The notes beneath the pieces are model-generated. The model saw nothing but the letters and a program-made list of their open reading frames with translations. It made no database searches and was not told where the DNA came from. Shown here one piece after another: positions 3,171-38,748 of a DNA stretch of 45,802 nt. The stretch comes from Octopus bimaculoides (lineage: Eukaryota): the NCBI RefSeq assembly GCF_001194135.2, contig NC_068983.1:98820151-98865952 (forward strand), in the 5' to 3' direction. Numbering within the stretch: position 1 is the stretch's first letter; every line of letters begins with the position of its first letter. Both the position numbers and the translations under genes were made by a program.

Positions 3171-4652
3171 GCCTATAGAAGAAACTTGACCAAGGTGCTG
3201 TTCAGTGGGACACAACCTGAAACTATGTGGATGGAAAGCAAACTTCTTAATGACACAGACATACCAGCACCTATTTTGCACCTTAATGTAATAATTCTCA
3301 CACAGAACTCACATGATAGTGTGTAACAAGGCTGGCCCTTTGGTTCACAAGTACAGTTAGTTCATTGGGTTTCCTCGAGATTTTTCGTCTGCACTATTTC
3401 ACCAACAAGGTTTGTGCCAACCTACAGTTATGGAAAAAAGACACTGGTTCAAGATGCTCCTTAGTAGGAATGAACCTGGGATCTCATGACAGCAAAGTGA
3501 ACTTCTTAAACCATCCAGCCACATACATATATTTAAAATTTCATTACACTTCACTGTGGAAACCAATCTGTCTTTTGTTGAGGAATGTCATGTTTGAAAC
3601 TACTTCTTGTTGAGATAAGTCAAGATAATTGAGTCAACTTAACTTGCAGAAAATATCAATTCTATTTTTTGGTAGATACTCAACATCATTACTAGAATAA
3701 CCATGAAATTTAACTTCGCAATTAAAAGGGACAAACATATGCATAATTATGCACATACAACATACATGTAAAACACTCACACACACATAATGATTCATAT
3801 ATAAATTTTAGATATGAAAATATAATGAACAAATAGAAAATGTATAAATTCATGTAACACATACACTCTTATACACAAATACAGATATTATATATACATA
3901 CACACACACGCATATATATATATATATATATATATAATACATACACACACATATACATACACACACGCACAGAAAATTTAAACAAATTTATACTACAAAA
4001 ATGATGAAAAACAAAGTGCCAGCAAAATAGATGAAAGTAGCTGTAAAAAAAAGATGATTAAAGGCAAATCATTAACGAAGTTAATTAAATACTCGTGGGA
4101 GACAAGATGAACACAACTATATCATAAAGCCGACTGTAGGTGAGGAATGAAATCGCTGGCGCTTGTGTTGCCACAGCAAAACAAAACAGACATTTTAGGA
4201 AAATCAGGAAATGTTGATTGAATGAGATGGCATTGATGGTGGTGCAGAATTTAGTGAGGGAATTATGCAGGCATATCAATCTTCTGCTATGTAATCACTT
4301 CAAATGTGCAAAGAAACTTTTGGTAATTAGAAAGAACATAAATATGATGACAATCCTGCCTCTTCCACCCCTCTCTCCCGCCTCTTGTTGTTGTTGTTTT
4401 AACATCTACTTTGCTATGCTTACATGGAATGGATGGAATTTGTTGAGACAGATTTTGGCGGCTGGATGCCTTTTCTGTCATCAACCCTCAATGGTTTCCC
4501 AAGTAAGATATTTCACCCCTGGGCAGATATGTTTTCACGGAAGACTGAAAACAAAGGACATGTGATAGTGACACTGATTTACAACTATCATGTGATGCCG
4601 AGGTAGGGAGACACTAGCACATGCATGTGCACATGTAAATATGCACACACTA

Positions 4653-4863
4653 CAGAGACTGCCCCAAAAATGTATACAGACTTCAGGAAAGGAAAAATCT
4701 TTATAAATATTTGACTTGTATAAGTGCCTTTATAAATATAGATACCTCTTTCGATGTTTTATCAAACTGCGATAACACTGAGTAAATTGCAATAATACTG
4801 AATTAAAATATTTATAGAGATTTTTCCTTTCCTGAAGTGTGAATACATTTTTGGGGCAGACGC

Positions 4864-4865
<2 letters not shown>
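4653..4865. mobile_element. Tc1/mariner-type MITE, 213 bp, 60-bp TIRs, TA target duplication
   Basis: TIRs 4653-4712 and 4806-4865 (5 mismatches), begins CAG, TA at 4651-4652 and 4866-4867. Confidence 0.85.
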
Positions 4866-4905
<40 letters not shown>

Positions 4906-10207: not shown

Positions 10208-10561
10208 TTCTTTTATTTGTTTCAGTCATTTGACTGTGGCCATGCTGGAGCACCACCTTTAGCCAAACAAATTAACCCCAGGACTTATTCTTTGTAAGCC
10301 CAGTACTTATTCTATCAGTTTTTTTTTTTACTGAACTGCTAAGTTACGGGGGACACGTAAAAACACCAGCAAGAGTTGTCAAGCGATGGTGGGAGGGCAG
10401 ACACAGAAACACATACACACACACATATATATATATATACAACAAGTTTCTTTCAGTTTCTATCTACCAAATCCACTCACAAGGCTTTGGTTGGCTGGAG
10501 GCTATAGTAGGAGACACTTCGGAACCAAGTGGTTGGTAAGCAAGCTACTTACTACACAGCC
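10208..10561 (-). mobile_element. SINE-A, near full length
   Basis: tcttttatttgtttcagtcatttgactgtggccatgctggagcacc...ctacttactacacagcc; tRNA-like head at the right end. Confidence 0.85.
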
Positions 10562-11935: not shown

Positions 11936-12052
11936 ATCTGATATATAAAATAATTACAACAAATATTATGTATTGCTGATGTTTAATTTTAAAATATGGT
12001 ATTCATAGGATGAACTTCAAAAATGATAAAAATTTGATTCCATGAATCTTAC

Positions 12053-12189
12053 CTTAGACACCGGGTGGACATAGGCTGTGTATCACCAAGACCAGCCAAC
12101 AAATATTCTACATCATCCATAAATTCTTGCGTCTCACCAGATTCTTGAACTTCATGAGCCTCTTTTACATTCCGTACAACCGTGAATAG
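12053..12189 (-). CDS. WAPL: WAPL coding exon (137 nt, start of WAPL domain): [45 protein letters not shown] + AG (split codon)
   Basis: Minus-strand acceptor tgtttcctccag and donor AG|gtaaga. The peptide closely parallels the recalled vertebrate WAPL segment [46 protein letters not shown]. Confidence 0.93.
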
Positions 12190-12280
12190 CTGGAGGAAAC
12201 AGAATGAGGTAAGAACAAAATAAGGATTCCTCTTGGTTAAACCAGAAAAAAAAAAAATAAAGTTTTTAAAACTGTAAAAA

Positions 12281-12612
12281 GTAAAGACCTCTTTCAATCA
12301 TGAATGACCTTGGGATTGCACCTAGAAAGTCACCCTCTGTGGCACAGGTCTGAGCAAGGTTGTTTATGGAAGGCCAGCAGTTGCCCATGCATACCAGCCA
12401 CCCCTCTCCATGCCACCGATGTTATCCAAGGGAAAGGCAAAGGCTGATGCAGCTTGGTACCAAAGATGTCGCAACTCATTCTTACAACTGAGTGAACCGG
12501 AGCACCGTGAAATAAAGTATCTTGTTCAAGAACACAACACATAGCCCTGTCTGGGAATCAAATTCACTACCTCATGATTGCAAGCCCAATGCTCTAACCA
12601 CTGAGCCATGCA
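12281..12612 (-). mobile_element. tRNA-derived SINE (SINE-D), about 90 bp upstream of the WAPL exon acceptor
   Basis: Ends ...ctctaaccactgagccatgc (reverse complement of head); roughly 80% identical by eye to 7765-8100. Confidence 0.8.
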
Positions 12613-13858: not shown

Positions 13859-13939
13859 ATACACCTTATGTATACATACACGCAAAGAATCTCGCATTAA
13901 TCATAAAAAAGGCAAATTAAAATAAGAAAAACAACATAC

Positions 13940-14173
13940 CTCTTTATGTTCTTTACTGACTTTCAAGGAGGTAAATGCTTCATCACCAACACGGCATGGC
14001 CAGTGCACTTTCCGAGTAAGTTTAGGTATGACCACATTAGCAGGGACCTCTGTGCCAGATTTGGAAACAGTTTTATCTGTAGATGTTTTGGCAGTGCTGC
14101 TCTGGGAACTGCTGTTGTTTGATGGAGCAGAAGTTGGTTTACCAGACCGTGCAGAACTTGGTCCTTCATCACC
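13940..14173 (-). CDS. WAPL: WAPL coding exon (234 nt, 78 codons, phase 0/0): GDEGPSSARSGKPTSAPSNNSSSQSSTAKT...FTSLKVSKEHKE
   Basis: Acceptor ttgtttacttacag, donor GAG|gtatgt, open frame. Splices in frame to 12053-12189 giving LKVSKEHKE|LFTVV (cf. vertebrate LKCRREDKE|LYTVV). S/T-rich linker expected upstream of the WAPL domain. Confidence 0.87.
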
Positions 14174-16399
14174 CTGTAAGTAAACAACATTTTCTGTTAA
14201 ATGAGAGAGAAATAAAACAGGCAACAATACAAAAATAATTGTTCAGTCTCAAACTAACCCCGATCCAGCACACCTATTTCAAAAGGCTCCATTCATAACA
14301 ATCTCCCCTTTTATTCAAACAGTGTATTAAAGACTGCAATGTCTCAATATATCTTTCTTTCTTTTAAAGATGGTAAGGCAAAATTTAATAAAAGAGGTGA
14401 CATCTATTTCTAGCAGGTCCAGCAACTGTATAGACCATTTTGGAGAAGCACCCGCGTGATACATGGCTCAGCATTAGGCAAGTTGCACTACTAAAAAAAA
14501 AATGAAGGTAATTTTGCATTAGACATGATATTCAGAAAGTGCCACAGGCTATAGTTTGCCCATGGCTGGTGTAAGAGCATCCTGGTTAACCCTTGCAACA
14601 TGCAGTTGTTGTCATGTCATAAGAATTGTTGGCTAGGATAACACTAAAGAGACAGAGTGGGTGAGAAGAGCAGGACAGATAGTTTCTGCTATGATGTTGT
14701 GATTGGAAACATAATTGTTATAAAGAGAAATCTAACTCAGAGTGAGTGGCATCACATAGACACTGATGTTTGGCAGGTAACCAAAGATAAAGACTTGAAA
14801 TATTAGGAATCAAACTTTGGAAACAGATGTTAAATGATGATGATGATGATGATGATATCACACACACACACACGATAAAAAACTGATGTCACATGCTTAA
14901 TGTATGTGTTTTGTTTATATGCTTGTTAGCTGCAGGATTTTATCCAGTGAAATGTCTCTTTAAGACAGCCAGTGTTAAAAGGACTTTTCCCTGGAAGATA
15001 TCCTACAGTTAATAAGTGTATAAATGAAACAAACATTAAGTAATGTGACATTGGTGAATTTTACATTATTGGAATTGCTTTTAATTTAAAATATATAATA
15101 TATACTTTATTTGTGGGTAAACCAGCATGCCATTGGTTTCATGCTAGGAGAGGTATATCTCTGAACAATCTTCAAGCCTAAGGCATGGGACATTGGTGTT
15201 CATCTCCATCTTGGATGATGTGTGTGTATATATATATATATATATATACGCATACACACACTCAAATAATGTATGTATATGTGCGTATATATAACAAAGT
15301 GCAATAGCTTTCAAATAATCAAGATAAAATAATCTACTTAAAAACAACAAGAATCCTATGTAAATTTTGTAAAAATACCTCATCAGCTAAAATACGCAAG
15401 CATATATTTTTAAGTTCACATGTTTTCTTCTCTATATTGCTGCCAAATCAATTATGTTCACAATCCAAAGGAAAAAAGAGAATTATTTTACATTAAATCA
15501 GCTATGAAAATTTAAATTAGAATAGGAAATAGTCCAAAAATTGTTAAACTTAATAGTGAATATCTGTTGCCATGGAAATTGATTCCTAGCTGTGGCTTTC
15601 ATACATAAAATGCATTGACGTCTAAGCTTCAAGTTTAGATAGATGGGTTAAGATAGTAGTACTTCCAGAAACTTATCTGAAACAGTGAGAAAGATGTAAC
15701 TAGTGTAAAGTGAAGCCAGACAAAACTTGGCAATCAGATAAACATTTAAATTGAAACTAGTATTTTATTCAAAGTAGAAGAGTGCAAAAGATCTTTTATG
15801 TTTTCACCAATGATGTAGAAGCCAGGTAAGGTGATAATGATATGAGATGTTGATAGAAAATTAGTAAAGACTCCAAATACTAAGAATTACATATAACCCT
15901 TCTAGAATATTCGTTATACAGATGGAACATAGTGATGCACAAATATACTTAAATATTCACTTGCACCAAATTTCGTCCACAGAAAGACACAATACTTGTG
16001 AATAAAAACATTGCTTCATTTCAATTATGAATTATCCCATTAGCATTTAAACAGACCATATCCAGCCCAAATATTCCACCTGATTTATGTTCAAACTGGC
16101 CAGATCCAGCCTTTCACGTTTGCCCTAAAATATAAAGAATCATACCATCAAAATCTCAAAGCTCCAAGATAATGTATGATTAATTCAAAACAAGGTGAAT
16201 ATATAAGCATGATATTTGACAGAATAATCTGAATGCTAAAGAGTTGTACCAATCCTGTCTAGGCTCCTAATCTCTCTGTAACAGAGCTTACTCATACAAT
16301 GAAGCTAAAATAATTAGAATAAAAGATCAACTAGATATTTTACTGCAGTCAACTTCAACTACTGAAGTCCCTGCTACAACATGTATGATAAGCTAAATA

Positions 16400-17782: not shown

Positions 17783-17880
17783 CCACCACCCATCTCCATG
17801 TGCACACACCACCACCACTGCCACCACCACCCATCCCCATGTGCACACACACCACCACCCATCTCCATGTGCGCACACAC
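17783..17880. repeat. Three copies of a ~25-bp unit caccacccatctccatgtgcacaca
   Basis: Directly visible, imperfect tandem. Confidence 0.8.
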
Positions 17881-18704
17881 ACACAAACACGTGCTCACAC
17901 ACACACACATGCACACAAACACACATACAGTATAATTGTTGAAGCGCGAAGTGGAATGTTTGGTAAGGAATATTATTGATCTTTTGAGCTATATTTATAG
18001 TGAACAATTGAAATTTTCTTATTATTTATCATATAACATAACTATTTTCTCTCTTCTCAGCAGATACATCAACAACGAAGCTGAATGTCTTTCTTTGTCG
18101 ACTCTACTTCTAGTTTTTCATTGCAGATTTCTTTGAATACTCTATTAATATTCTGATGGATTCCACATCAGTATTGACAAGTATTCCAGTTGTGTTGTTC
18201 AATCAATGGAACTACATATGCTTGCATTGTACAGTAAGCAGCTGAATATTGTTTACAAGGCTGACCCTTTGAATCATGGAAGCAGCCCATTTGACGGACT
18301 TCTTCACAAGTATCTGTCTACTCAGAAAGTGACATATAGTGGAATTGAACTGTGGTCCTTATGGCTACAATGTGAACTTCTTGACCATTTGGCTATGCAT
18401 TGTTGTGCATAGCCACTTGTATGAGAAATAGTGTGGGGGCAGGGGTGGGGGAATAGGAATACTCATCCACATACAAAATAAAAATGCCACTGGTGAAGTT
18501 TTATGGGGGGGGGGGGATTTAGATATCTACAATGGGCTACTTTCGGTTTCCATCTACCAAATCTATTCACAAGGTTTTGGTTAGCTTGAGGCTATAGTAG
18601 ATGCCCAAGGTTCAACACAATGGGACTAAACCCATGGTAGCTGGGAAGTGCATATTTGTTCAGGCTATGTGTAGTTTTCTATTCTTTTCTACTCTAAGCA
18701 CAAG

Positions 18705-18900
18705 GCCCGAAATTTTTGGGGGAGGGAGCCAGTCGATTAGATTGACCCCAGTATGCAACTGGTACTTAATTTATCGACCCCAAAAGGATGAAAGGCAAAG
18801 TTGACCTCAGCGGAATTTGAACTCAGAACATAAAGACAGACGAAATACTGCTAAGCATTTCACCCAACATGCTAATGTTTCTGCCAGCTCACTGCCTTGG
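18705..18900 (-). mobile_element. SINE-B copy
   Basis: Reverse complement of the SINE-B head and body. Confidence 0.82.
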
Positions 18901-18974
18901 TGTAGTTCTCTGGTAGAGCCATTTTAACTTTGACATAAGCACAATGGAAGGAAGTTGAGATAGAAAAGCTATTA

Positions 18975-19185
18975 AGTAGTCGTATGCTGTCAACTTAATG
19001 AGACAATCCCCTGAAGGGAATAATACTACTGTTGGTTAGACCTAGGAAGCTGCACCGCTTCCTAGGTCTAACCAACAGTAGTATTATTCCCTTCAGGGGA
19101 CTGTCACATTAAGTTGACAGCATACAACTACTTCATCGTATCACTACTGCATAAATCTCTGAGAGATTTTGAAATGTATTATTTC
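18975..19185. mobile_element. 211-bp insertion containing a long palindrome, flanked by the 14-bp direct repeat tagaaaagctatta
   Basis: Direct repeats 18961-18974 and 19186-19199; arms 18974-19050 and 19057-19133, loop tgcacc. Confidence 0.75.
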
Positions 19186-19222
19186 TAGAAAAGCTATTAT
19201 TTTAAATAATGTATGTGCACAT

Positions 19223-19288
<66 letters not shown>

Positions 19289-20639: not shown

Positions 20640-21008
20640 TATCTCTTATTTTGTATCAGTCATTTGAAGGGATGGTTTTTTAGTTGAATAAATCAACCCT
20701 AGGGGTTAATTTTTTTTAAAGCCTAGTACTTATTCTATCAGTCACTTTTGCTGAACCGTTAGGTTACAGGGTCATAAACATGCCAACACCAGTTGCCAAG
20801 CAGTGACGGGAGNNNNNNNNNNNNNNNNNNNNNNGGGGGGGACAGACAAAGTCATACACACACACTTCTTTCAGTTTCTGTCTACCAAATCCACTCACAA
20901 GGCTTTGGTCAGCCCAGGATATAGTAGAAGAAACTTGCCCAAGTGGCCACACAGTGGGACTGAACCTAGAACCATGTGACTGAGAAGCAAGCTTCTTACC
21001 ACACAGCC
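20640..21008 (-). mobile_element. SINE-A copy spanning gap 20813-20834
   Basis: Diagnostic motifs on both sides of the gap. Confidence 0.8.
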
Positions 21009-22768
21009 ACACCAGCACAAAAGTACATATAAAAAAATAGCATTATACGCGGTGTGATCAATAGGTATCAGGACTGTTGCCATAGTAACAAAGCTAAAGT
21101 ACGCAGAGTAAAGTTGCTTGGCACAGGGAAGAGACAGCTGGAGATACAAAGATTAAATCAAAAAAATACTATTGAATAATAGTAATATAGATTAAACTAA
21201 AAAATACTATCAAACAATAGTAATTTTTAAATAGGGTTAAAAGGTCAAAAGACTACACAAAGACTTATGGACCTAAATCTTAATCACAGTTTTGAACCAC
21301 ACTCCAAAGTACTTTATAGCTCAAAGGACTGTAGCATAACCAAAACCGTACTTGCATTTGGAGGAGAATATATACAGAAGAACATATTGAAAAATACACA
21401 AAGACACTCACACAACTGTATACTCATGTGTATGTATGCATATGTGGTTGTGCTAATGCTTGTCTCTGTGTAGTCTATATGTATATTAATGGGCATAAGA
21501 GTACAATGTTGTGTGAGTATCTTCATGTATTTTTTAGTATGTTAATTCTTCAGTACATATGCTTTTCTGTATGTGCAAGTAAAGTTTTGGTTATGTTACA
21601 GCCCATTGGACTGTAACAACATTACGAAGTAACTCTGAGCCCCTAGAAACAGCTGTCGGATCTGTAACACCATACCTTCTCATTGAATTTTACTGTGTCT
21701 TTGTACTCTGTGTAAGTTTGTTCTGTTTCATTGTCTGAAAATCTTCAGTCTTTGCCTTCTCTCAATTCACATGAATACATGTATATATATTTTGTATATC
21801 CTAACCCAAACATCTTTATCTGTTTATTTACTCATTTTGTCTCTTTCTCTCTCTCTCTCTCTCCATACACACAATAATTCATTCATTATTACTTCACCAA
21901 GCCAAGCTCTTGGGCACTACACCTGATCCACAGCTGGGTTTGACACCAACACCTGGCCTTTGAGTGCTTTTAGCAGAATCTATTCTGTTGCAAGCATTTC
22001 ATCCAGGTCTCTGATTCGAGTACAACTTGTTTATTTTTCTAGTTAGAGGCACTGAAAAGGGTCATTAGTACTACCCTTCCTTATGTGATAAAACTTAAAA
22101 AGTAAATATTATGCGTCACTGAGATGGGCAGAATATAACCAAAACATATTCAGAGTTGGTGTTCCATACTCACCAGAAAAGCACAAAATAATATTTGCAT
22201 TGATTGATACTGCTTCAGCATCCTCATTGCATATTATCTTTAGTTAACTTTTTACTATTCCATGCAATAAATATGTTAGCACTAACTTAACTAATTTATC
22301 ATGTTCTAATTAAATATCCTAGACTACAACGCTATTTTGCTGTACAGAGTATATAAAAGCATAGATCAATGCTTATCTTGATGTTTTGTTAACTAACAGA
22401 TCAATAATTTCATCTGTTTTAGAGTGATCAAACAGAAAATATCTCCAATAATATAGTCAATACTTAATGACTTCAATTTATCTGTGAATTAGGTTATTGC
22501 AATGTGTTTTTGTTTCTTCTTTTTAAAGTAACTGAAAGAGAGGTTAACATTCTAGAGAATGTTGTTGGGGGAAAAAGGTATGTATAATAAAAAAAAAAAT
22601 TTCAAATAGATTTTGGACTAGTCAGATCTATAAGACAAGCCCTGGTTTACTATTCATTCCGACAGCTTTGATATAGCAACACACTCATCATAGTTCTGTG
22701 ACATCCACATTCACTCCATCTTCAACACACACACACACACACACACTTACATACATATTGTATAGATT

Positions 22769-23875: not shown

Positions 23876-24749
23876 ATTACATGGAAAAATGCAAGCAAGA
23901 GAAATAATATTTTTAACATTATAAACCTGGAAAATTACAGGACAAGTTATTACACTTGGAAAAGTTCAAGACAACTCATTACATCTGATAAAGTACAGAG
24001 CAAGAACATTTTTTAAATATTGCAGCTAAGGATAAAATTTCAATATTAAAAATTATTTGATTTTAATTTGCAAAGTAACATAATTAAAAAAAGGTAGCAT
24101 CATTTTGTTAAAATATTGGCACACTAGAATACTTCAGGAATGAGAGCCAGAAGTATCAATATAGCTAAAGTTTTATACAAAGTAGAACATTATATATAGG
24201 CAAATTCATTATGTTAAAAATAGGCATTGAGTCAGAACTAAAAATGTGAAGACTTGACAAAAATTGAGGCAATAACTCAAGCAAATTTTACTGTAAATTT
24301 GTTGTTATAGGTAGGATTTTACTGTAATATATAACTAATTTTTGTATTATTCTATTTATTGTACTAACTAATTATGTACTACTATTATTTTTATAACCTA
24401 TTTTCAAATTTCTAATTATTAATTAATAATTTAAAAAATGAATTTTTTTAAAGTGCAAAAAATATTTTGAGTTATTTTTAATTTTTAATAGAAGTAAAAA
24501 GTAATAACAAATAGAACTTGTAATAAAATTTTTAGTTTTAATAAAAGCTAATATTTTCTAAATCTAAATATTTTTTTTTTGAAATTTTATCCTTAGCTGC
24601 AATATTTTAAGTAAAAATTTTCTTGTTCTGTACTTTACCAGATGTAATGAGTTGTCCTGAACTTTTCCAAGTGTAATAACTTGTCCTATAATTTTCCAGG
24701 TTTATGATCTTAAGAATATTATTTATCTTGCTCATATTTTCCATGTAAT
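23876..24749. mobile_element. Fold-back non-autonomous DNA element with ~170-bp inverted repeats and a very AT-rich spacer
   Basis: 23876-24043 is the reverse complement of 24579-24749 (e.g. caagttattacacttggaaaagttca / tgaacttttccaagtgtaataacttg). Confidence 0.8.
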
Positions 24750-25248: not shown

Positions 25249-25283
<35 letters not shown>

Positions 25284-25284
25284 A

Positions 25285-25499
25285 TCCTTTTTACTTCAGG
25301 CACAAGGCTTGAAATTTGGTGGGAGGGGACTAGTCAATTACATCGACTCCAGCACTTGATTGATACTTATTTCATTGACCATGAAAGGATGAAAGGCAAA
25401 GTTGACCTCAGTGGAATTTGAACTCAGAATGTAGTGAGGGGTGAAATACTGCTAAGCATTTTGCCCAGCAAGCTGATGATTCTGCCAGCTCACTGCCTC

Positions 25500-25547
<48 letters not shown>

Positions 25548-25745
25548 CCTTTCTACTATCTGCACAAGGCCTGAAATTTTGGGAGGAGGAGTCAAGCTGA
25601 TTACATCGACTCCAGTGTTTCACTGGTACTTAATTTATGGACTCCAAAAGGATGAAAGGCAAAGTTGACCTCGGTGGAATTTGAACTCAGAATGTAGAGA
25701 CGGGCAAAATAGCACTTGGCATTTCATCCAGCATGCTAACGATTA
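25285..25745 (-). mobile_element. Two tandem SINE-B copies separated by (AAT)n
   Basis: 25285-25500 and 25545-25745, with (AAT)n at 25500-25545. Confidence 0.8.
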
Positions 25746-26029
25746 ATAATAATAATAACAACAACAAAATGAACTGTTGAAGATGACATGAGTGTTCAAT
25801 TTTTGTTAAACGACCTGCACAAAAAATGATTTGTTTATAGTGATCAAATGTGTGTGCTGTACATTAATTCACCCCCTTCNNNNNNNNNNNNNNNNNNNNN
25901 NNNNNNNNNNNNNNNNNNNNNNNNNNNNNNNNNNNNNNNNNNNNNNNNNNNNNNNNNNNNNNNNNNNNNNNNNNNNNNNNNNNNNNNNNNNNNNNNNNNN
26001 NNNNNNNNNNNNNNNNNNNNNNNTATAAA

Positions 26030-29559: not shown

Positions 29560-29945
29560 TCTTTTATCTTTAACTTGTTTCAGTCATTAGACCGTGGCCA
29601 TGCTGGGGCAGGGCACTGCCTTAAACTTTCGGTTGAATATATCGACCCCAGAACTAATTTTTTTAAAGCATGGTGCTTATTCTATTGGTCTCTTTTGCCG
29701 AAACACTAAATTATGGAAACATAAACACACCAGTACCAGTTGTCAAGTGGTGGTAGGGGACAGACACAAAGACACACACACACATGTATATATATACGAT
29801 GGGCTTCTTTCAGTTTCCATTTATCAAATCTACTCACAAGGGTTTGGTTGGCCTGAGGTAAAAGTAAAAGACACTTGCCCACGGTGTCATACAGTGGGAT
29901 TGAAGCTGGAACCGTGTGGTTGGGAAGCAAACTTCTTACCATGGC
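29560..29945 (-). mobile_element. SINE-A, near full length
   Basis: Diagnostic motifs. Confidence 0.82.
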
Positions 29946-36074: not shown

Positions 36075-36676
36075 CATGCATGTGGTAAGAAGCTTGCTTC
36101 CCAACCACATGGTTCCGGGTTCAGTCCCAAAGCATGGCACCTTGGGCTAGTGTCTTCTACTATAGCTTTGGGTCAATCAAAGCTTTGTGAGTGAATCTGC
36201 TAGACAGAAATTGAAAGAAGACTGTCATGTATGTGTGTGTGTTTTTGTGTCTGTATCTGTTCCCTACCACCACCACCACCACCACCACTCAACAACCAGT
36301 GTTGGTGTGTTTATGTCCCTACAGTTTAACAGTTTGGCAAAAGAGACTGATATAAGCACCAGGCTTAACAAGATTAAGTACTGGGGTTGATTCCTTCAGC
36401 TAAAAATTCTCCAAGGCAGTGCCCCAATATGGCCGCAGTCTAATGACGGAAACAAGTAAAAGATAAAAGATTATGTGTATTTTCTTTTACTTGTTTCAGT
36501 CATTTGACTGCAGCTATTCTGGAGCACTGAAGAAATTGATCTCAGAGGACTTATTCTATTGGTCTCTTTTGTTGAACTGCTAAGTTATGGGGATGTGGAC
36601 ACACCAACATCAGTTGTCAAGTGATGGTGGAGGGACACAGGTACAACACACATAAATATATATATATATATGTATG

Positions 36677-36709
<33 letters not shown>

Positions 36710-37345
36710 NNNNNNNNNNNNNNNNNNNNNNNNNNNNNNNNNNNNNNNNNNNNNNNNNNNNNNNNNNNNNNNNNNNNNNNNNNNNNNNNNNNNNNNNNNN
36801 NNNNNNNNNNNNNNNNNNNNNNNNNNNNNNNNNNNNNNNNNNNNNNNNNNNNNNNNNNNNNNNNNNNNNNNNNNNNNNNNNNNNNNNNNNNNNNNNNNNN
36901 NNNNNNNNNNNNNNNNNNNNNNNNNNNNNNNNNNNNNNNNNNNNNNNNNNNNNNNNNNNNNNNNNNNNNNNNNNNNNNNNNNNNNNNNNNNNNNNNNNNN
37001 NNNNNNNNNNNNNNNNNNNNNNNNNNNNNNNNNNNNNNNNNNNNNNNNNNNNNNNNNNNNNNNNNNNNNNNNNNNNNNNNNNNNNNNNNNNNNNNNNNNN
37101 NNNNNNNNNNNNNNNNNNNNNNNNNNNNNNNNNNNNNNNNNNNNNNNNNNNNNNNNNNNNNNNNNNNNNNNNNNNNNNNNNNNNNNNNNNNNNNNNNNNN
37201 NNNNNNNNNNNNNNNNNNATATATACACAACGGGCTTCTTTCAGTTTCCATTTACCAAATCCACTCTCAAGGCTTTGGTCAACCTGAAGCTACAGTAGAA
37301 GACACTTGCCCAAAATCATGTGGTTGGGAAGCAAGCTTCTTACCA
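36075..37345. mobile_element. Tail-to-tail SINE-A pair: 36075-36470 (+) and 36483-37345 (-, spans gap)
   Basis: gaaacaagtaaaaga (36449-36463) is complementary to tcttttacttgtttc (36483-36497). Confidence 0.82.
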
Positions 37346-37939
37346 CACACCCACGCCTGCACCTTTATGTAAATATATTACACTATGGGCTCCTAACACA
37401 GTTTTTGTTTACCGAATTTATTCACAAGGCATTGGTTGGCCAGGTGGAAGAATATTATGATTCTATCAAGAGTTGTCTATTTCTGAGAGTCTACTAATGC
37501 AAAAGCAGATTCAGAGAAAATGTGTAAAGTTGTCTTTGAGAAAGGAAGGGAGGGAGGGAGGTATAGGTGATATAAAGAGAAAGTGAAAAAAATGGCAGGA
37601 CAATAAATAAGAGAGAAAAGTGGAAGAGGGAGACTGAGAGAGAACAGGTATGAGATGGGATATGATAGAAAAAAAAAAAAGACTGTACATTTCTATATGT
37701 ATGCATATATGTGTGCATGCATATTTACATATGTAAATACAAACACATACAAAAATGCACATGATGTTCATTGAAAAAAAAAATAAATAAAATCATTAAG
37801 GTTCCCATTAATATGAGCATTAAGTCATTTGAATATTAATTAAGGAAGGTGGAACTAGGATTAGACAAGTGTACACACACACACATACAGGAATAAAATG
37901 CTTTTGATAGTTACAGAATAGTAATGATAATAATAAATA

Positions 37940-38711
37940 ATCCTTACTACTATAGGCATAAGGCCTGAAATATTGGAAGTAGTGGGGGAGAGGGAGTTGA
38001 TTACATCAATCCCACTGCTCAACTGACACTTATTTTAGCAACCCCGAAAGGATGAAAGATAAAGTCAACCTCGGCAGAATTTGAACTCAGAACATGAAGA
38101 TGGACGAAATGCCACTAAGCATTTAGCCCAGCGTGTTAATGATTCTGACAGCTCGCAGCGTTAATGATATTAATAATAATAATTATTATTTCTTTATTGC
38201 CCACAAGGGGCTAAACATAGAGGGGACAAACAAGGACAGACAAACGGATTAAGTTGATTACATCGACCCTAGTGCGTAACTGGTACTTATTTAATCAACC
38301 CCGAAAGGATGAAAGGCAAAGTCGACCTTGGCGGAATTTGAACTCAGAACGTAAAATGGTTTCAAATTTTGTCACAAGGGCAGCAATTTTGGGAGAGAGG
38401 ATGAGTCGATTACATCAACCCTGAAAGGATGAAAGGTGAAGTTGACCTTGGCAGAATTTGAACTCAGAATTTAGCAACAGGCGAAATACTGCTAAGCATT
38501 TTGTCCAGGATGCTAGCGATTCTGTCAGCTCGCTGCCTCAACAACAATAATAATGGTTTCAAATTTTGTCACAAGGGCAGCCATTTTGGGGGAGTAGATG
38601 TGTCGATTATATTGGCCCCAGTGTTCAACTGATACTTAATTTATCGAGCGATGAGCAAAATACTGTCAAGCATTTAGCCCAGCATGCTAACGAGTCTGCC
38701 AGCTCGCCACC

Positions 38712-38712
<1 letters not shown>
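37940..38712 (-). mobile_element. Stack of four co-oriented SINE-B copies, mostly joined through (AAT)n-type tracts
   Basis: About 37940-38160, 38188-38352, 38353-38540, 38550-38712; three carry gaaaggatgaaag...gaatttgaactcagaa, the fourth is internally deleted. Confidence 0.82.

Positions 38713-38748
<36 letters not shown>

What the first reader, a model, noticed from the sequence alone, without database searches (positions are those of the whole stretch)
18961..19199. 77-bp-stem fold-back insertion with a 14-bp target-site duplication
Arms 18974-19050 and 19057-19133 pair with only 3 mismatches (the inner 44 bp are perfect) around a 6-nt loop. The left arm starts at the insertion boundary, and tagaaaagctatta is repeated exactly at 18961-18974 and 19186-19199. 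Two mismatches (18981/19126, 19006/19101) become G-U pairs on the minus, WAPL-sense strand. The remaining 52 nt hold a second small palindrome, aaatctct-g-agagattt. Inference: a retro-insertion whose cDNA snapped back and self-primed, creating an instant hairpin-RNA locus (endo-siRNA/miRNA precursor or strong ADAR substrate). It could also be a mobile palindromic mini-element.
Basis: partly seen in the sequence, partly recalled or inferred. Interest (0 to 1): 0.72.

Follow-up and report, generated by a model that had tools for sequence, protein, structure and literature searches.

The report
Fold-back retro-insertion in a WAPL intron
A 211-bp piece of DNA, inserted by the same copy-and-paste machinery that spreads this genome's short repeats, had its front part copied twice in opposite directions and so forms a near-perfect 77-bp hairpin; it is a tidy example of a known kind of insertion accident, and nothing here shows that it has a function.

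Summary
Arms 18974-19050 and 19057-19133 pair with 3 mismatches around a 6-nt loop. The exact 14-bp repeat TAGAAAAGCTATTA brackets a 211-bp insert, with about 1.5e-5 such repeats expected by chance.

New evidence points to target-primed reverse transcription of a + strand RNA, which is antisense to WAPL.
- The window's tRNA-like SINE ("SINE-A") has 12-15-bp TSDs and no poly(A).
- That SINE ends in TAGTAGAAAGGATTATT(ATT)n.
- The hairpin's target site resembles this tail (top 0.33% of windows).
- The insert's own 3' end also resembles it (top 2.3%).
- Both resemblances hold only in the + orientation.

The palindrome's centre is therefore the 5' end of the copied RNA. The left arm is a second, inverted copy of that RNA's first 77 nt, made at integration by cDNA snap-back or by fully overlapping twin priming.

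A cut-and-paste MITE is disfavoured, because there are no terminal inverted repeats at the right end and the TSD is too long. It matches no Rfam family.

Three things could not be tested: copy number in the genome, the empty site in relatives, and expression, small RNAs or editing. Any function is inference only.

Overall it is a variant of a known process and of modest interest.

The parts
18961..18974 (+). Left copy of the 14-bp target-site duplication, TAGAAAAGCTATTA. Its last base also pairs as the first base of the left arm.
   Evidence: Exact repeat of 19186-19199. About 1.5e-5 are expected by chance at this position. With the 3' flank, the site resembles the SINE-A 3' tail.
18975..19050 (+). 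Left arm: an inverted (antisense) second copy of the first ~77 nt of the inserted RNA, inferred to have been made at integration.
   Evidence: Reverse complement of 19057-19133 with 3 mismatches.
19051..19056 (+). 6-nt loop TGCACC, the palindrome centre and the inferred position of the 5' end of the copied RNA (the turn-around or junction point).
19057..19133 (+). Right arm: the sense copy of the 5' part of the inserted unit.
   Evidence: It is contiguous with the tail and the tail-like 3' terminus.
19134..19185 (+). Unpaired 52-nt 3' part of the unit. It contains an 8-bp stem-loop at 19153-19169 and ends at 19171-19183 in GAAATGTATTATT, which resembles the SINE-A terminus GAAAGGATTATT.
   Evidence: no partner in the left end. 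(alignment score 18, reached by 2.3% of windows; the minus-sense alternative scores at background; 0.005 stem-loops expected by chance). (fold).
19186..19199 (+). Right copy of the 14-bp target-site duplication.
18681..18899 (-). Context and yardstick, not part of the insert: a neighbouring SINE-A copy, antisense on the + strand, with its own 12-bp TSD (18669-18680 and 18900-18911, 11/12 match) and no poly(A).
12052..12297 (-). Context: the WAPL exon that starts the WAPL domain. It sets the host gene on the minus strand, so the hairpin lies upstream of it, very probably in an intron.
   Evidence: Pfam PF07814, E=2.1e-12, 47 bits against a cut-off of 24.6. The upstream exon-like ORF 13904-14242(-) has no start codon.

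Best explanation
This is a single retro-insertion made by target-primed reverse transcription (TPRT), using the same LINE machinery that mobilises the window's tRNA-like SINE-A. A short + strand RNA of about 130-135 nt (19051/19057-19185) ended in a SINE-A-like tail. It was reverse-transcribed from a nick at a target that itself looks like that tail. When the cDNA reached the RNA's 5' end, that 5' part was copied a second time in inverted orientation. Either the cDNA 3' end folded back on itself through a 2-nt GC pairing across a 6-nt loop and self-primed (snap-back), or the upstream target overhang primed a second cDNA on the same RNA 52 nt from its 3' end and both cDNAs ran to the 5' end (fully overlapping twin priming). 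Staggered nicks left the 14-bp TSD. The arms were identical at birth and have since picked up 3 substitutions, one of them a CpG-to-TpG type change. Because a palindrome reads nearly the same on both strands, any WAPL pre-mRNA crossing it would contain a 77-bp duplex. Shown: the structure, the TSD, the tail-like target and 3' end, the polarity, and the match to resident SINE TSD lengths. Inferred: the fold-back step, the identity of the RT, the single-event origin, and any RNA-level consequence.
For: (1) An exact 14-bp TSD brackets 211 bp, with about 1.5e-5 expected by chance. (2) SINE-A copies in the same window have TSDs of 12, 14 and 15 bp and no poly(A). (3) SINE-A polarity is fixed by an A-box-like TGGCAGA at +13, a B-box-like GAGTTCAAATTCC, and (ATT)n tails. 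Its RNA ends in TAGTAGAAAGGATTATT(ATT)n, and its TSDs begin with tail-like bases. (4) The reconstructed empty site GAGATAGAAAAGCTATTATTTT aligns to that tail with score 22, reached by only 0.33% of all 30-nt windows on both strands, real SINE-A tails included; in minus sense it scores 10. (5) The unit's 3' end GAAATGTATTATT aligns to GAAAGGATTATT with score 18, reached by 2.3% of windows; the minus-sense 3' end scores 13. (6) The right terminus has no inverted partner, so the structure is 'one unit plus an inverted copy of its 5' part'. (7) The 3' end of the left TSD (ATTA) pairs 3 of 4 with 19133-19136, a junction microhomology. (8) TSD-bounded inverted fragments from twin priming are documented (PMC2837659), as are TPRT-associated inverted duplications through a small hairpin with 2-bp microhomology (bioRxiv 10.1101/2024.12.14.628481). 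(9) The three mismatches and the TSD argue against an assembly artefact.
Against: No source copy or family member of the unit was found, so 'one unit' is inferred from asymmetry alone. There is no other copy in 45.8 kb, and the genome could not be searched. The two tail resemblances are short (12-20 nt) and were found after looking, so the p-values (0.003, 0.023) are somewhat optimistic. Classical twin priming gives an internal deletion, not a 77-nt overlap. The junction microhomology is weak (about 4 of 7). No empty site, no reads and no long-read confirmation were available.
Confidence: 0.55

Rival explanations
1. This is a full-length copy of a retro-mobilised, SINE-like family whose RNA already contains the 77-bp hairpin at its 5' end. 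The 211-nt RNA spans 18975-19185 in + sense. TPRT is the same as in the best explanation, but nothing special happened at integration.
For: All the TPRT evidence fits equally well: TSD length, tail-like target and 3' end, and polarity. The arms are not perfectly identical (3 mismatches), which a master copy could carry.
Against: There is no second copy in 45.8 kb, although SINE-A and SINE-B occur 10-20 times each. There is no pol III A/B box, tRNA-like head or Rfam match in the unit. An RT would have to copy through a 77-bp near-perfect duplex every time. One mismatch is of the ordinary CpG-decay type, as expected for later mutation.
Confidence: 0.2
2. This is a cut-and-paste foldback element or MITE, a DNA transposon derivative with long terminal inverted repeats.
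For: It has long, close-spaced inverted repeats and flanking direct repeats. The window holds other MITE-like inverted repeats, for example 24012-24610.
Against: The right terminus (GAAATGTATTATTTC) has no inverted counterpart at the left terminus. The inverted repeat ends 52 nt short of the right TSD. From my own knowledge, 14 bp is longer than the TSDs of described DNA-transposon superfamilies (2-11 bp). There is no other copy in the window.
Confidence: 0.05
3. This is not TPRT. A snap-back or extrachromosomal DNA fragment was captured as filler during repair of a staggered double-strand break, or a local replication template switch produced it.
For: End-joining can capture filler DNA, and self-annealing 3' overhangs give inverted duplications.
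Against: The arms are unrelated to the flanking DNA, so this is not a local template switch. The resemblance of both the target and the insert's 3' end to the SINE-A tail, in one orientation, would be unexplained. A clean 14-bp duplication matches the resident SINE's TSDs.
Confidence: 0.1
4. This is an assembly artefact: a chimeric fold-back read or contig.
For: The window is a draft scaffold with five N gaps, and no reads could be examined.
Against: Artefactual fold-backs are perfect and lack TSDs, whereas this one has 3 arm mismatches and an exact TSD. The nearest gap is 1.6 kb away, at 20813. Short-read assemblers tend to collapse such palindromes rather than create them (my own knowledge).
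Confidence: 0.03
5. This is a selected hairpin-RNA gene (hpRNA/endo-siRNA or miRNA precursor), whatever its origin.
For: It forms a very stable hairpin on the WAPL-sense strand, with only one non-pairing position. hpRNA loci are known to arise from inverted duplicates (PMC10317233).
Against: No Rfam family reaches its threshold; the best score is 29 bits against a gathering score of 190. A 77-bp near-perfect stem is unlike animal pre-miRNAs. No complementary target was found in the window. The G-U bias is not significant (p=0.25). There are no conservation or small-RNA data.
Confidence: 0.07

Closest known systems
Twin-priming 5'-inverted LINE-1 or retro-copy insertions (Ostertag & Kazazian 2001, as described in PMC2837659)
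   Same: TSDs bound two inverted fragments of one RNA. The inverted fragment abuts the upstream TSD. There is microhomology between the upstream target overhang and an internal site of the RNA. The average TSD is about 14 bp.
   Different: Classical cases carry an internal deletion between the two fragments. Here the fragments overlap completely for 77 nt, giving a palindrome whose centre is the RNA's 5' end. The machinery here is not poly(A)-dependent.
TPRT-associated inverted duplications by self-annealing of a 3' end through a small hairpin (bioRxiv 10.1101/2024.12.14.628481), and the classical self-primed hairpin second-strand cDNA synthesis by reverse transcriptases (my own knowledge)
   Same: A 3' end folds back on a 2-nt microhomology and is extended on itself. 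Here a terminal GC could pair across the 6-nt loop.
   Different: In the L1 study the duplicated material is genomic DNA next to the insertion. Here it is the inserted cDNA itself.
LINE/SINE pairs with short simple-repeat 3' tails, such as the RTE clade (PMC2887409; an RTE LINE is the active LINE reported in octopus, PMC9115989)
   Same: No poly(A). The tail ends in a simple repeat, (ATT)n in SINE-A. Target sites resemble the tail, and TSDs are 12-15 bp.
   Different: The partner LINE was not identified in the window. The unit shares only about 12 terminal nt with SINE-A. That the organism is a cephalopod is my recollection, not a test.
Drosophila hpRNA loci that yield endo-siRNAs (PMC10317233)
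   Same: A long, near-perfect inverted repeat embedded in a transcript, and evolutionarily young.
   Different: hpRNAs derive from inverted copies of their target genes and are defined by Dicer-2-dependent small RNAs. Here no target and no small-RNA data are known.
MITEs and foldback DNA transposons
   Same: Long, close-spaced inverted repeats flanked by direct repeats.
   Different: The inverted repeat does not reach the right end, the TSD is 14 bp, and there is an asymmetric 52-nt tail.

Membership tests
Non-LTR (TPRT) retro-insertion | Variable-length target-site duplication of about 7-20 bp directly flanking the insert | tested here: met
   Exact 14-bp TSD. Resident SINE-A copies have TSDs of 12, 14 and 15 bp.
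Non-LTR (TPRT) retro-insertion | 3' end of the insert carries the tail used by the mobilising LINE/SINE system | tested here: inconclusive
   GAAATGTATTATT against the SINE-A tail GAAAGGATTATT scores 18, reached by 2.3% of windows. This is suggestive but short, and the partner LINE was not identified.
Non-LTR (TPRT) retro-insertion | Target site shows homology to the RNA's 3' tail, in the orientation of the insert | tested here: met
   The empty site scores 22 against the SINE-A tail, in the top 0.33% of windows; the opposite orientation scores 10. SINE-A's own TSDs show the same pattern.
Non-LTR (TPRT) retro-insertion | A source gene or family copies exist elsewhere in the genome | not testable with these tools
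   There is no other copy in the window. The collection scans and protein routes were empty.
Twin-priming 5' inversion | [quoted passage not shown] | tested here: met
   Left arm is the reverse complement of the right arm, both inside the TSDs.
Twin-priming 5' inversion | Inversion junction with an internal deletion (or a small duplication) of the element | tested here: not met
   The overlap is complete over 77 nt and there is no deletion (definition in PMC2837659). The mechanism may be similar, but this is not a classical member.
Twin-priming 5' inversion | Microhomology between the upstream target overhang and the internal priming site | tested here: inconclusive
   ATTA pairs 3 of 4 with 19133-19136, and about 4 Watson-Crick pairs plus 1 G-U form over 7 positions. 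This is not above chance.
MITE / foldback DNA transposon | Terminal inverted repeats at both ends, abutting the TSD | tested here: not met
   The right terminus lacks any inverted partner, and the inverted repeat stops 52 nt before the right TSD.
MITE / foldback DNA transposon | Short TSD of superfamily-specific length (2-11 bp) | tested here: not met
   The TSD is 14 bp. The length range is from my own knowledge.
microRNA / described structured RNA family | Match to a curated covariance model at its gathering score | tested here: not met
   The best hairpin hit is MIR946 at 29 bits against a gathering score of 190. The unit alone gives only a 13-bit snoRNA hit.
hpRNA / endo-siRNA locus | Dicer-dependent 21-23-nt duplex small RNAs from the arms, and a complementary target | not testable with these tools
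   No sequencing runs were available. No complementary sequence was found elsewhere in the window.

The most novel reading that the evidence does not exclude
The fold-back retro-insertion created, in one step, a transcribed 77-bp dsRNA inside WAPL pre-mRNA that is processed into endo-siRNAs or is hyper-edited. Alternatively, it became the founder of a hairpin-bearing retro-mobile family. Either way, snap-back during TPRT would be a general, one-step route by which non-LTR retrotransposition gives rise to hairpin-RNA loci in this lineage.
Probability: 0.12. Interest if true: 0.6.

Novelty: new variant of a known kind. Interest (0 to 1): 0.3.

Why it matters
It is a clean natural example of a retro-insertion in which the 5' part of the template was copied twice in opposite orientation. 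That produced an almost perfect 77-bp palindrome in a non-poly(A), simple-repeat-tailed LINE/SINE system. If such events recur, they would be a one-step source of long intronic dsRNA, which could act as an ADAR or Dicer substrate, and of fragile DNA palindromes. As a single locus with no expression or comparative data, its present value is mainly as a mechanistic curiosity and as a search template for similar events genome-wide.

Tried and rejected
- **Exact-protein look-ups** of two ORFs beside the hairpin, to fetch other assemblies of the locus, were not on record.
- **WAPL-exon protein search** gave only two distant fragments. Their 54-kb ENA contig L001 shares no DNA similarity with the window.
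- **Protein search with an ORF from the very abundant SINE-B** found no candidate at all. The collection therefore holds nothing from this organism, and I ran no further search on the hairpin's own short frames.
- **Exact-pattern scans** for three parts of the arm and for the tail gave 0 hits: two in metagenome contigs, two in viral contigs and one in GTDB genome contigs.
- **Rfam** on the region and on the unit alone gave nothing near threshold. **ARAGORN** found no tRNA.
- **Paralogous empty site:** the flanks are single-copy in the window. Only 18517-18634 is repeat-derived.
- **Second example of the process:** the head-to-head SINE-B pair at 36.4 kb has the right topology, but its arms are no more alike than random family pairs (74%; 4 shared versus 33 private departures), and an N gap hides the right flank. 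I rejected it as evidence.
- **G-U pairs on the WAPL-sense strand** as a sign of selection: rejected, since two of two transitions gives p=0.25.
- **Hammerhead or retrozyme reading:** rejected, because there is no ribozyme hit.

Full report
**Observation**

The structure is exactly as described.
- Arms 18974-19050 and 19057-19133 are reverse complements with three mismatches: 18981/19126, 19001/19106 and 19006/19101.
- The inner 44 bp are perfect and the loop is TGCACC.
- TAGAAAAGCTATTA occurs exactly at 18961-18974 and 19186-19199, bracketing a 211-bp insert (18975-19185).
- The last 52 nt of the insert (19134-19185) have no partner and contain the small palindrome 19153-19169.
- As RNA, the region folds at -151.9 kcal/mol on the minus strand (z=-23) and -141.4 on the plus strand (z=-20.6).
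Two of two transitions falling that way has p=0.25 and carries no weight.

These features are not chance events. About 1.5e-5 exact 14-mer repeats abutting the palindrome are expected, and the next-longest perfect non-simple hairpin stem in the 45.8-kb window is 19 nt, against 44 here.

**Context**

The ORF 12052-12297 on the minus strand is the start of the WAPL domain (Pfam PF07814, E=2e-12). An exon-like ORF without a start codon lies at 13904-14242(-). The host gene is therefore on the minus strand, and the hairpin lies 4.7 kb upstream of that exon, very probably in an intron.

The window is a draft scaffold with five N gaps, the nearest 1.6 kb away. It is dense in two SINE-like families and in (CA)n(TA)n microsatellites. 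The repeats remind me of cephalopod genomes, but that is memory and was not tested.

**What kind of insertion**

The hairpin unit has no other copy in the window, so I used the resident repeats as a yardstick.
- The tRNA-like family I call SINE-A has a copy right next to the hairpin at 18681-18899.
- SINE-A copies have TSDs of 12, 14 and 15 bp and no poly(A).
- SINE-A's polarity is set by an A-box-like TGGCAGA 13 nt from one end, a B-box-like GAGTTCAAATTCC downstream of it, and simple-repeat tails at the other end.
- In RNA sense it ends ...TAGTAGAAAGGATTATT(ATT)n, and its TSDs begin with tail-like bases (ATTATT..., TTATTATT..., AGAAAAC...).

That pattern is the signature of target-primed reverse transcription in which the nicked target pairs with the RNA's 3' tail. 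It is typical of LINE/SINE systems with very short simple-repeat tails, such as the RTE clade (PMC2887409). An RTE element is the active LINE reported in octopus (PMC9115989).

**Link to the hairpin**

- The reconstructed empty site, GAGATAGAAAAGCTATTATTTT, aligns to the SINE-A tail with score 22. Only 0.33% of all 30-nt windows on both strands reach that score, real SINE-A tails included. In the opposite orientation the site scores 10.
- The insert's own 3' end, GAAATGTATTATT (19171-19183), aligns to GAAAGGATTATT with score 18, reached by 2.3% of windows. The minus-sense alternative 3' end scores 13, which is background.
- The 14-bp TSD falls within the SINE-A range.

The simplest reading is that the same machinery inserted this piece, and that the copied RNA had + strand polarity, antisense to WAPL.

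These resemblances are short and were noticed during the analysis. I treat them as good but not conclusive evidence.

**Consequence for the hairpin**

With + polarity, first-strand cDNA synthesis starts at 19185 and runs leftwards. The palindrome centre (19051-19056) is then where the RNA template ended. The left arm is a second, inverted copy of the first 77 nt of that template. Two known processes give this topology.
- **Snap-back.** The cDNA 3' end folds back and primes on itself. Here a terminal GC can pair across the 6-nt loop. The extension then joins the upstream target overhang. TPRT-linked inverted duplications through small hairpins with 2-bp microhomology have been documented for L1 (bioRxiv 10.1101/2024.12.14.628481). 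Self-primed hairpin second strands are a classical property of reverse transcriptases (my own knowledge).
- **Twin priming.** The upstream overhang ...GCTATTA-3' primes a second cDNA on the same RNA at 19133, and both cDNAs run to the RNA's 5' end. ATTA pairs 3 of 4 with 19133-19136.

Classical twin priming leaves an internal deletion between the two fragments (PMC2837659). A complete 77-nt overlap would be unusual, which is why I lean slightly towards snap-back. The sequence alone cannot separate the two.

The three arm differences fit later mutation. One is a CpG-to-TpG type change and two of the three are transitions. The arms differ by 3.9%, and zero of 14 differences in the TSD is compatible with that.

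**Rivals**

- **A hairpin-bearing retro-mobile family**, in which the whole 211-nt RNA already holds the hairpin, fits all the TPRT evidence. Only a genome-wide copy count can exclude it. Against it are the absence of a second copy in a window that holds 10-20 copies of each SINE family, the lack of any pol III-type head or Rfam match, and the need to reverse-transcribe through a 77-bp duplex at every round.
- **A cut-and-paste MITE or foldback element** is disfavoured. The inverted repeat stops 52 nt before the right TSD, the termini are unrelated, and 14 bp is longer than known DNA-transposon TSDs.
- **Break-repair filler capture or local template switching** does not explain the tail-like target and 3' end. 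The arms are also unrelated to the flanks.
- **An assembly artefact** would be perfect and would lack a TSD.
- **A selected miRNA or hpRNA gene** has no support. No family match comes near threshold, the stem is unlike animal pre-miRNAs, and no complementary target was found in the window. hpRNA loci do arise from inverted duplicates (PMC10317233), so the idea stays open as a consequence of the insertion, not as a finding.

**What could not be done**

Attempts to reach the same or related genomes all failed:
- exact-ORF look-ups;
- a WAPL protein search;
- a search with a SINE-B-derived ORF;
- five exact-pattern scans of metagenome, viral and prokaryote-genome contigs.

Copy number, source locus, empty site and expression are therefore untested. 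The flanks are single-copy in the window, so there is no paralogous empty site either.

**Verdict**

This is a real, fairly young, TPRT-type retro-insertion whose 5' part was copied twice in inverted orientation, giving a 77-bp hairpin in a WAPL intron.

The retro-insertion and snap-back idea is supported in its main line and sharpened in polarity, machinery and target choice. The functional claims remain speculation.

It is a variant of a known kind of event. Interest is modest unless genome-wide or RNA data show recurrence or processing.

Noticed in passing
window 36230-36650: Two copies of the window's other abundant SINE-like family (SINE-B, motif TTTCAGTCATTTGACTGCGGCCATGCTGGGGCAC) lie head-to-head, with their 5' ends about 0-13 nt apart. 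This is the same 'centre = RNA 5' end' topology as the hairpin. However, the arms are only 74% alike, no closer than random family pairs (4 shared versus 33 private departures from consensus). The right copy runs into a microsatellite and the N gap at 36710, so a TSD around the pair cannot be checked.
   Followed up: partly
window 4644-4727 / 4789-4875: Another single-copy inverted repeat: arms of about 67-85 nt, 86-90% complementary, with a 61-83-nt spacer, followed by (TG)n. No clear TSD was found.
   Followed up: partly
window 23985-24640: A MITE-like structure. Inverted repeats of about 40-70 nt (90% over the core 24012-24051 / 24571-24610) lie about 520 bp apart, and the complementarity extends into the flanks.
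   Followed up: no
window 21314-21430 / 21494-21616: A nested inverted repeat with arms of about 117 nt, 73-80% complementary, and a 63-nt spacer. No convincing TSD was found.
   Followed up: no
window 25283-25763 and 37939-38713: SINE-A copies sit in tandem, or as partial tandem units joined through (ATT)n. This is consistent with new copies inserting into the simple-repeat tails of older ones.
   Followed up: partly
window 19200-19288 and 17864-17930: The Rfam 'mir-297', 'mir-3149' and 'mir-1277' hits (25-38 bits, gathering scores 81-100) fall on (CA)n(TA)n microsatellites just right of the insertion. They are composition-driven, not miRNA genes.
   Followed up: yes
window 18517-18634: Just left of the SINE-A copy lies the 3' part of a SINE-B-like element, about 20 copies of which are in the window (for example 29784-29866 and 10427-10510). 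The SINE-A copy at 18681-18899 inserted just downstream of it.
   Followed up: partly
L001 (ENA contig ERZ21930224:ctg35007l) 10001-10312: A metagenome-assembly contig carries a WAPL-domain exon from an unrelated eukaryote. It shares no DNA similarity with the window.
   Followed up: yes
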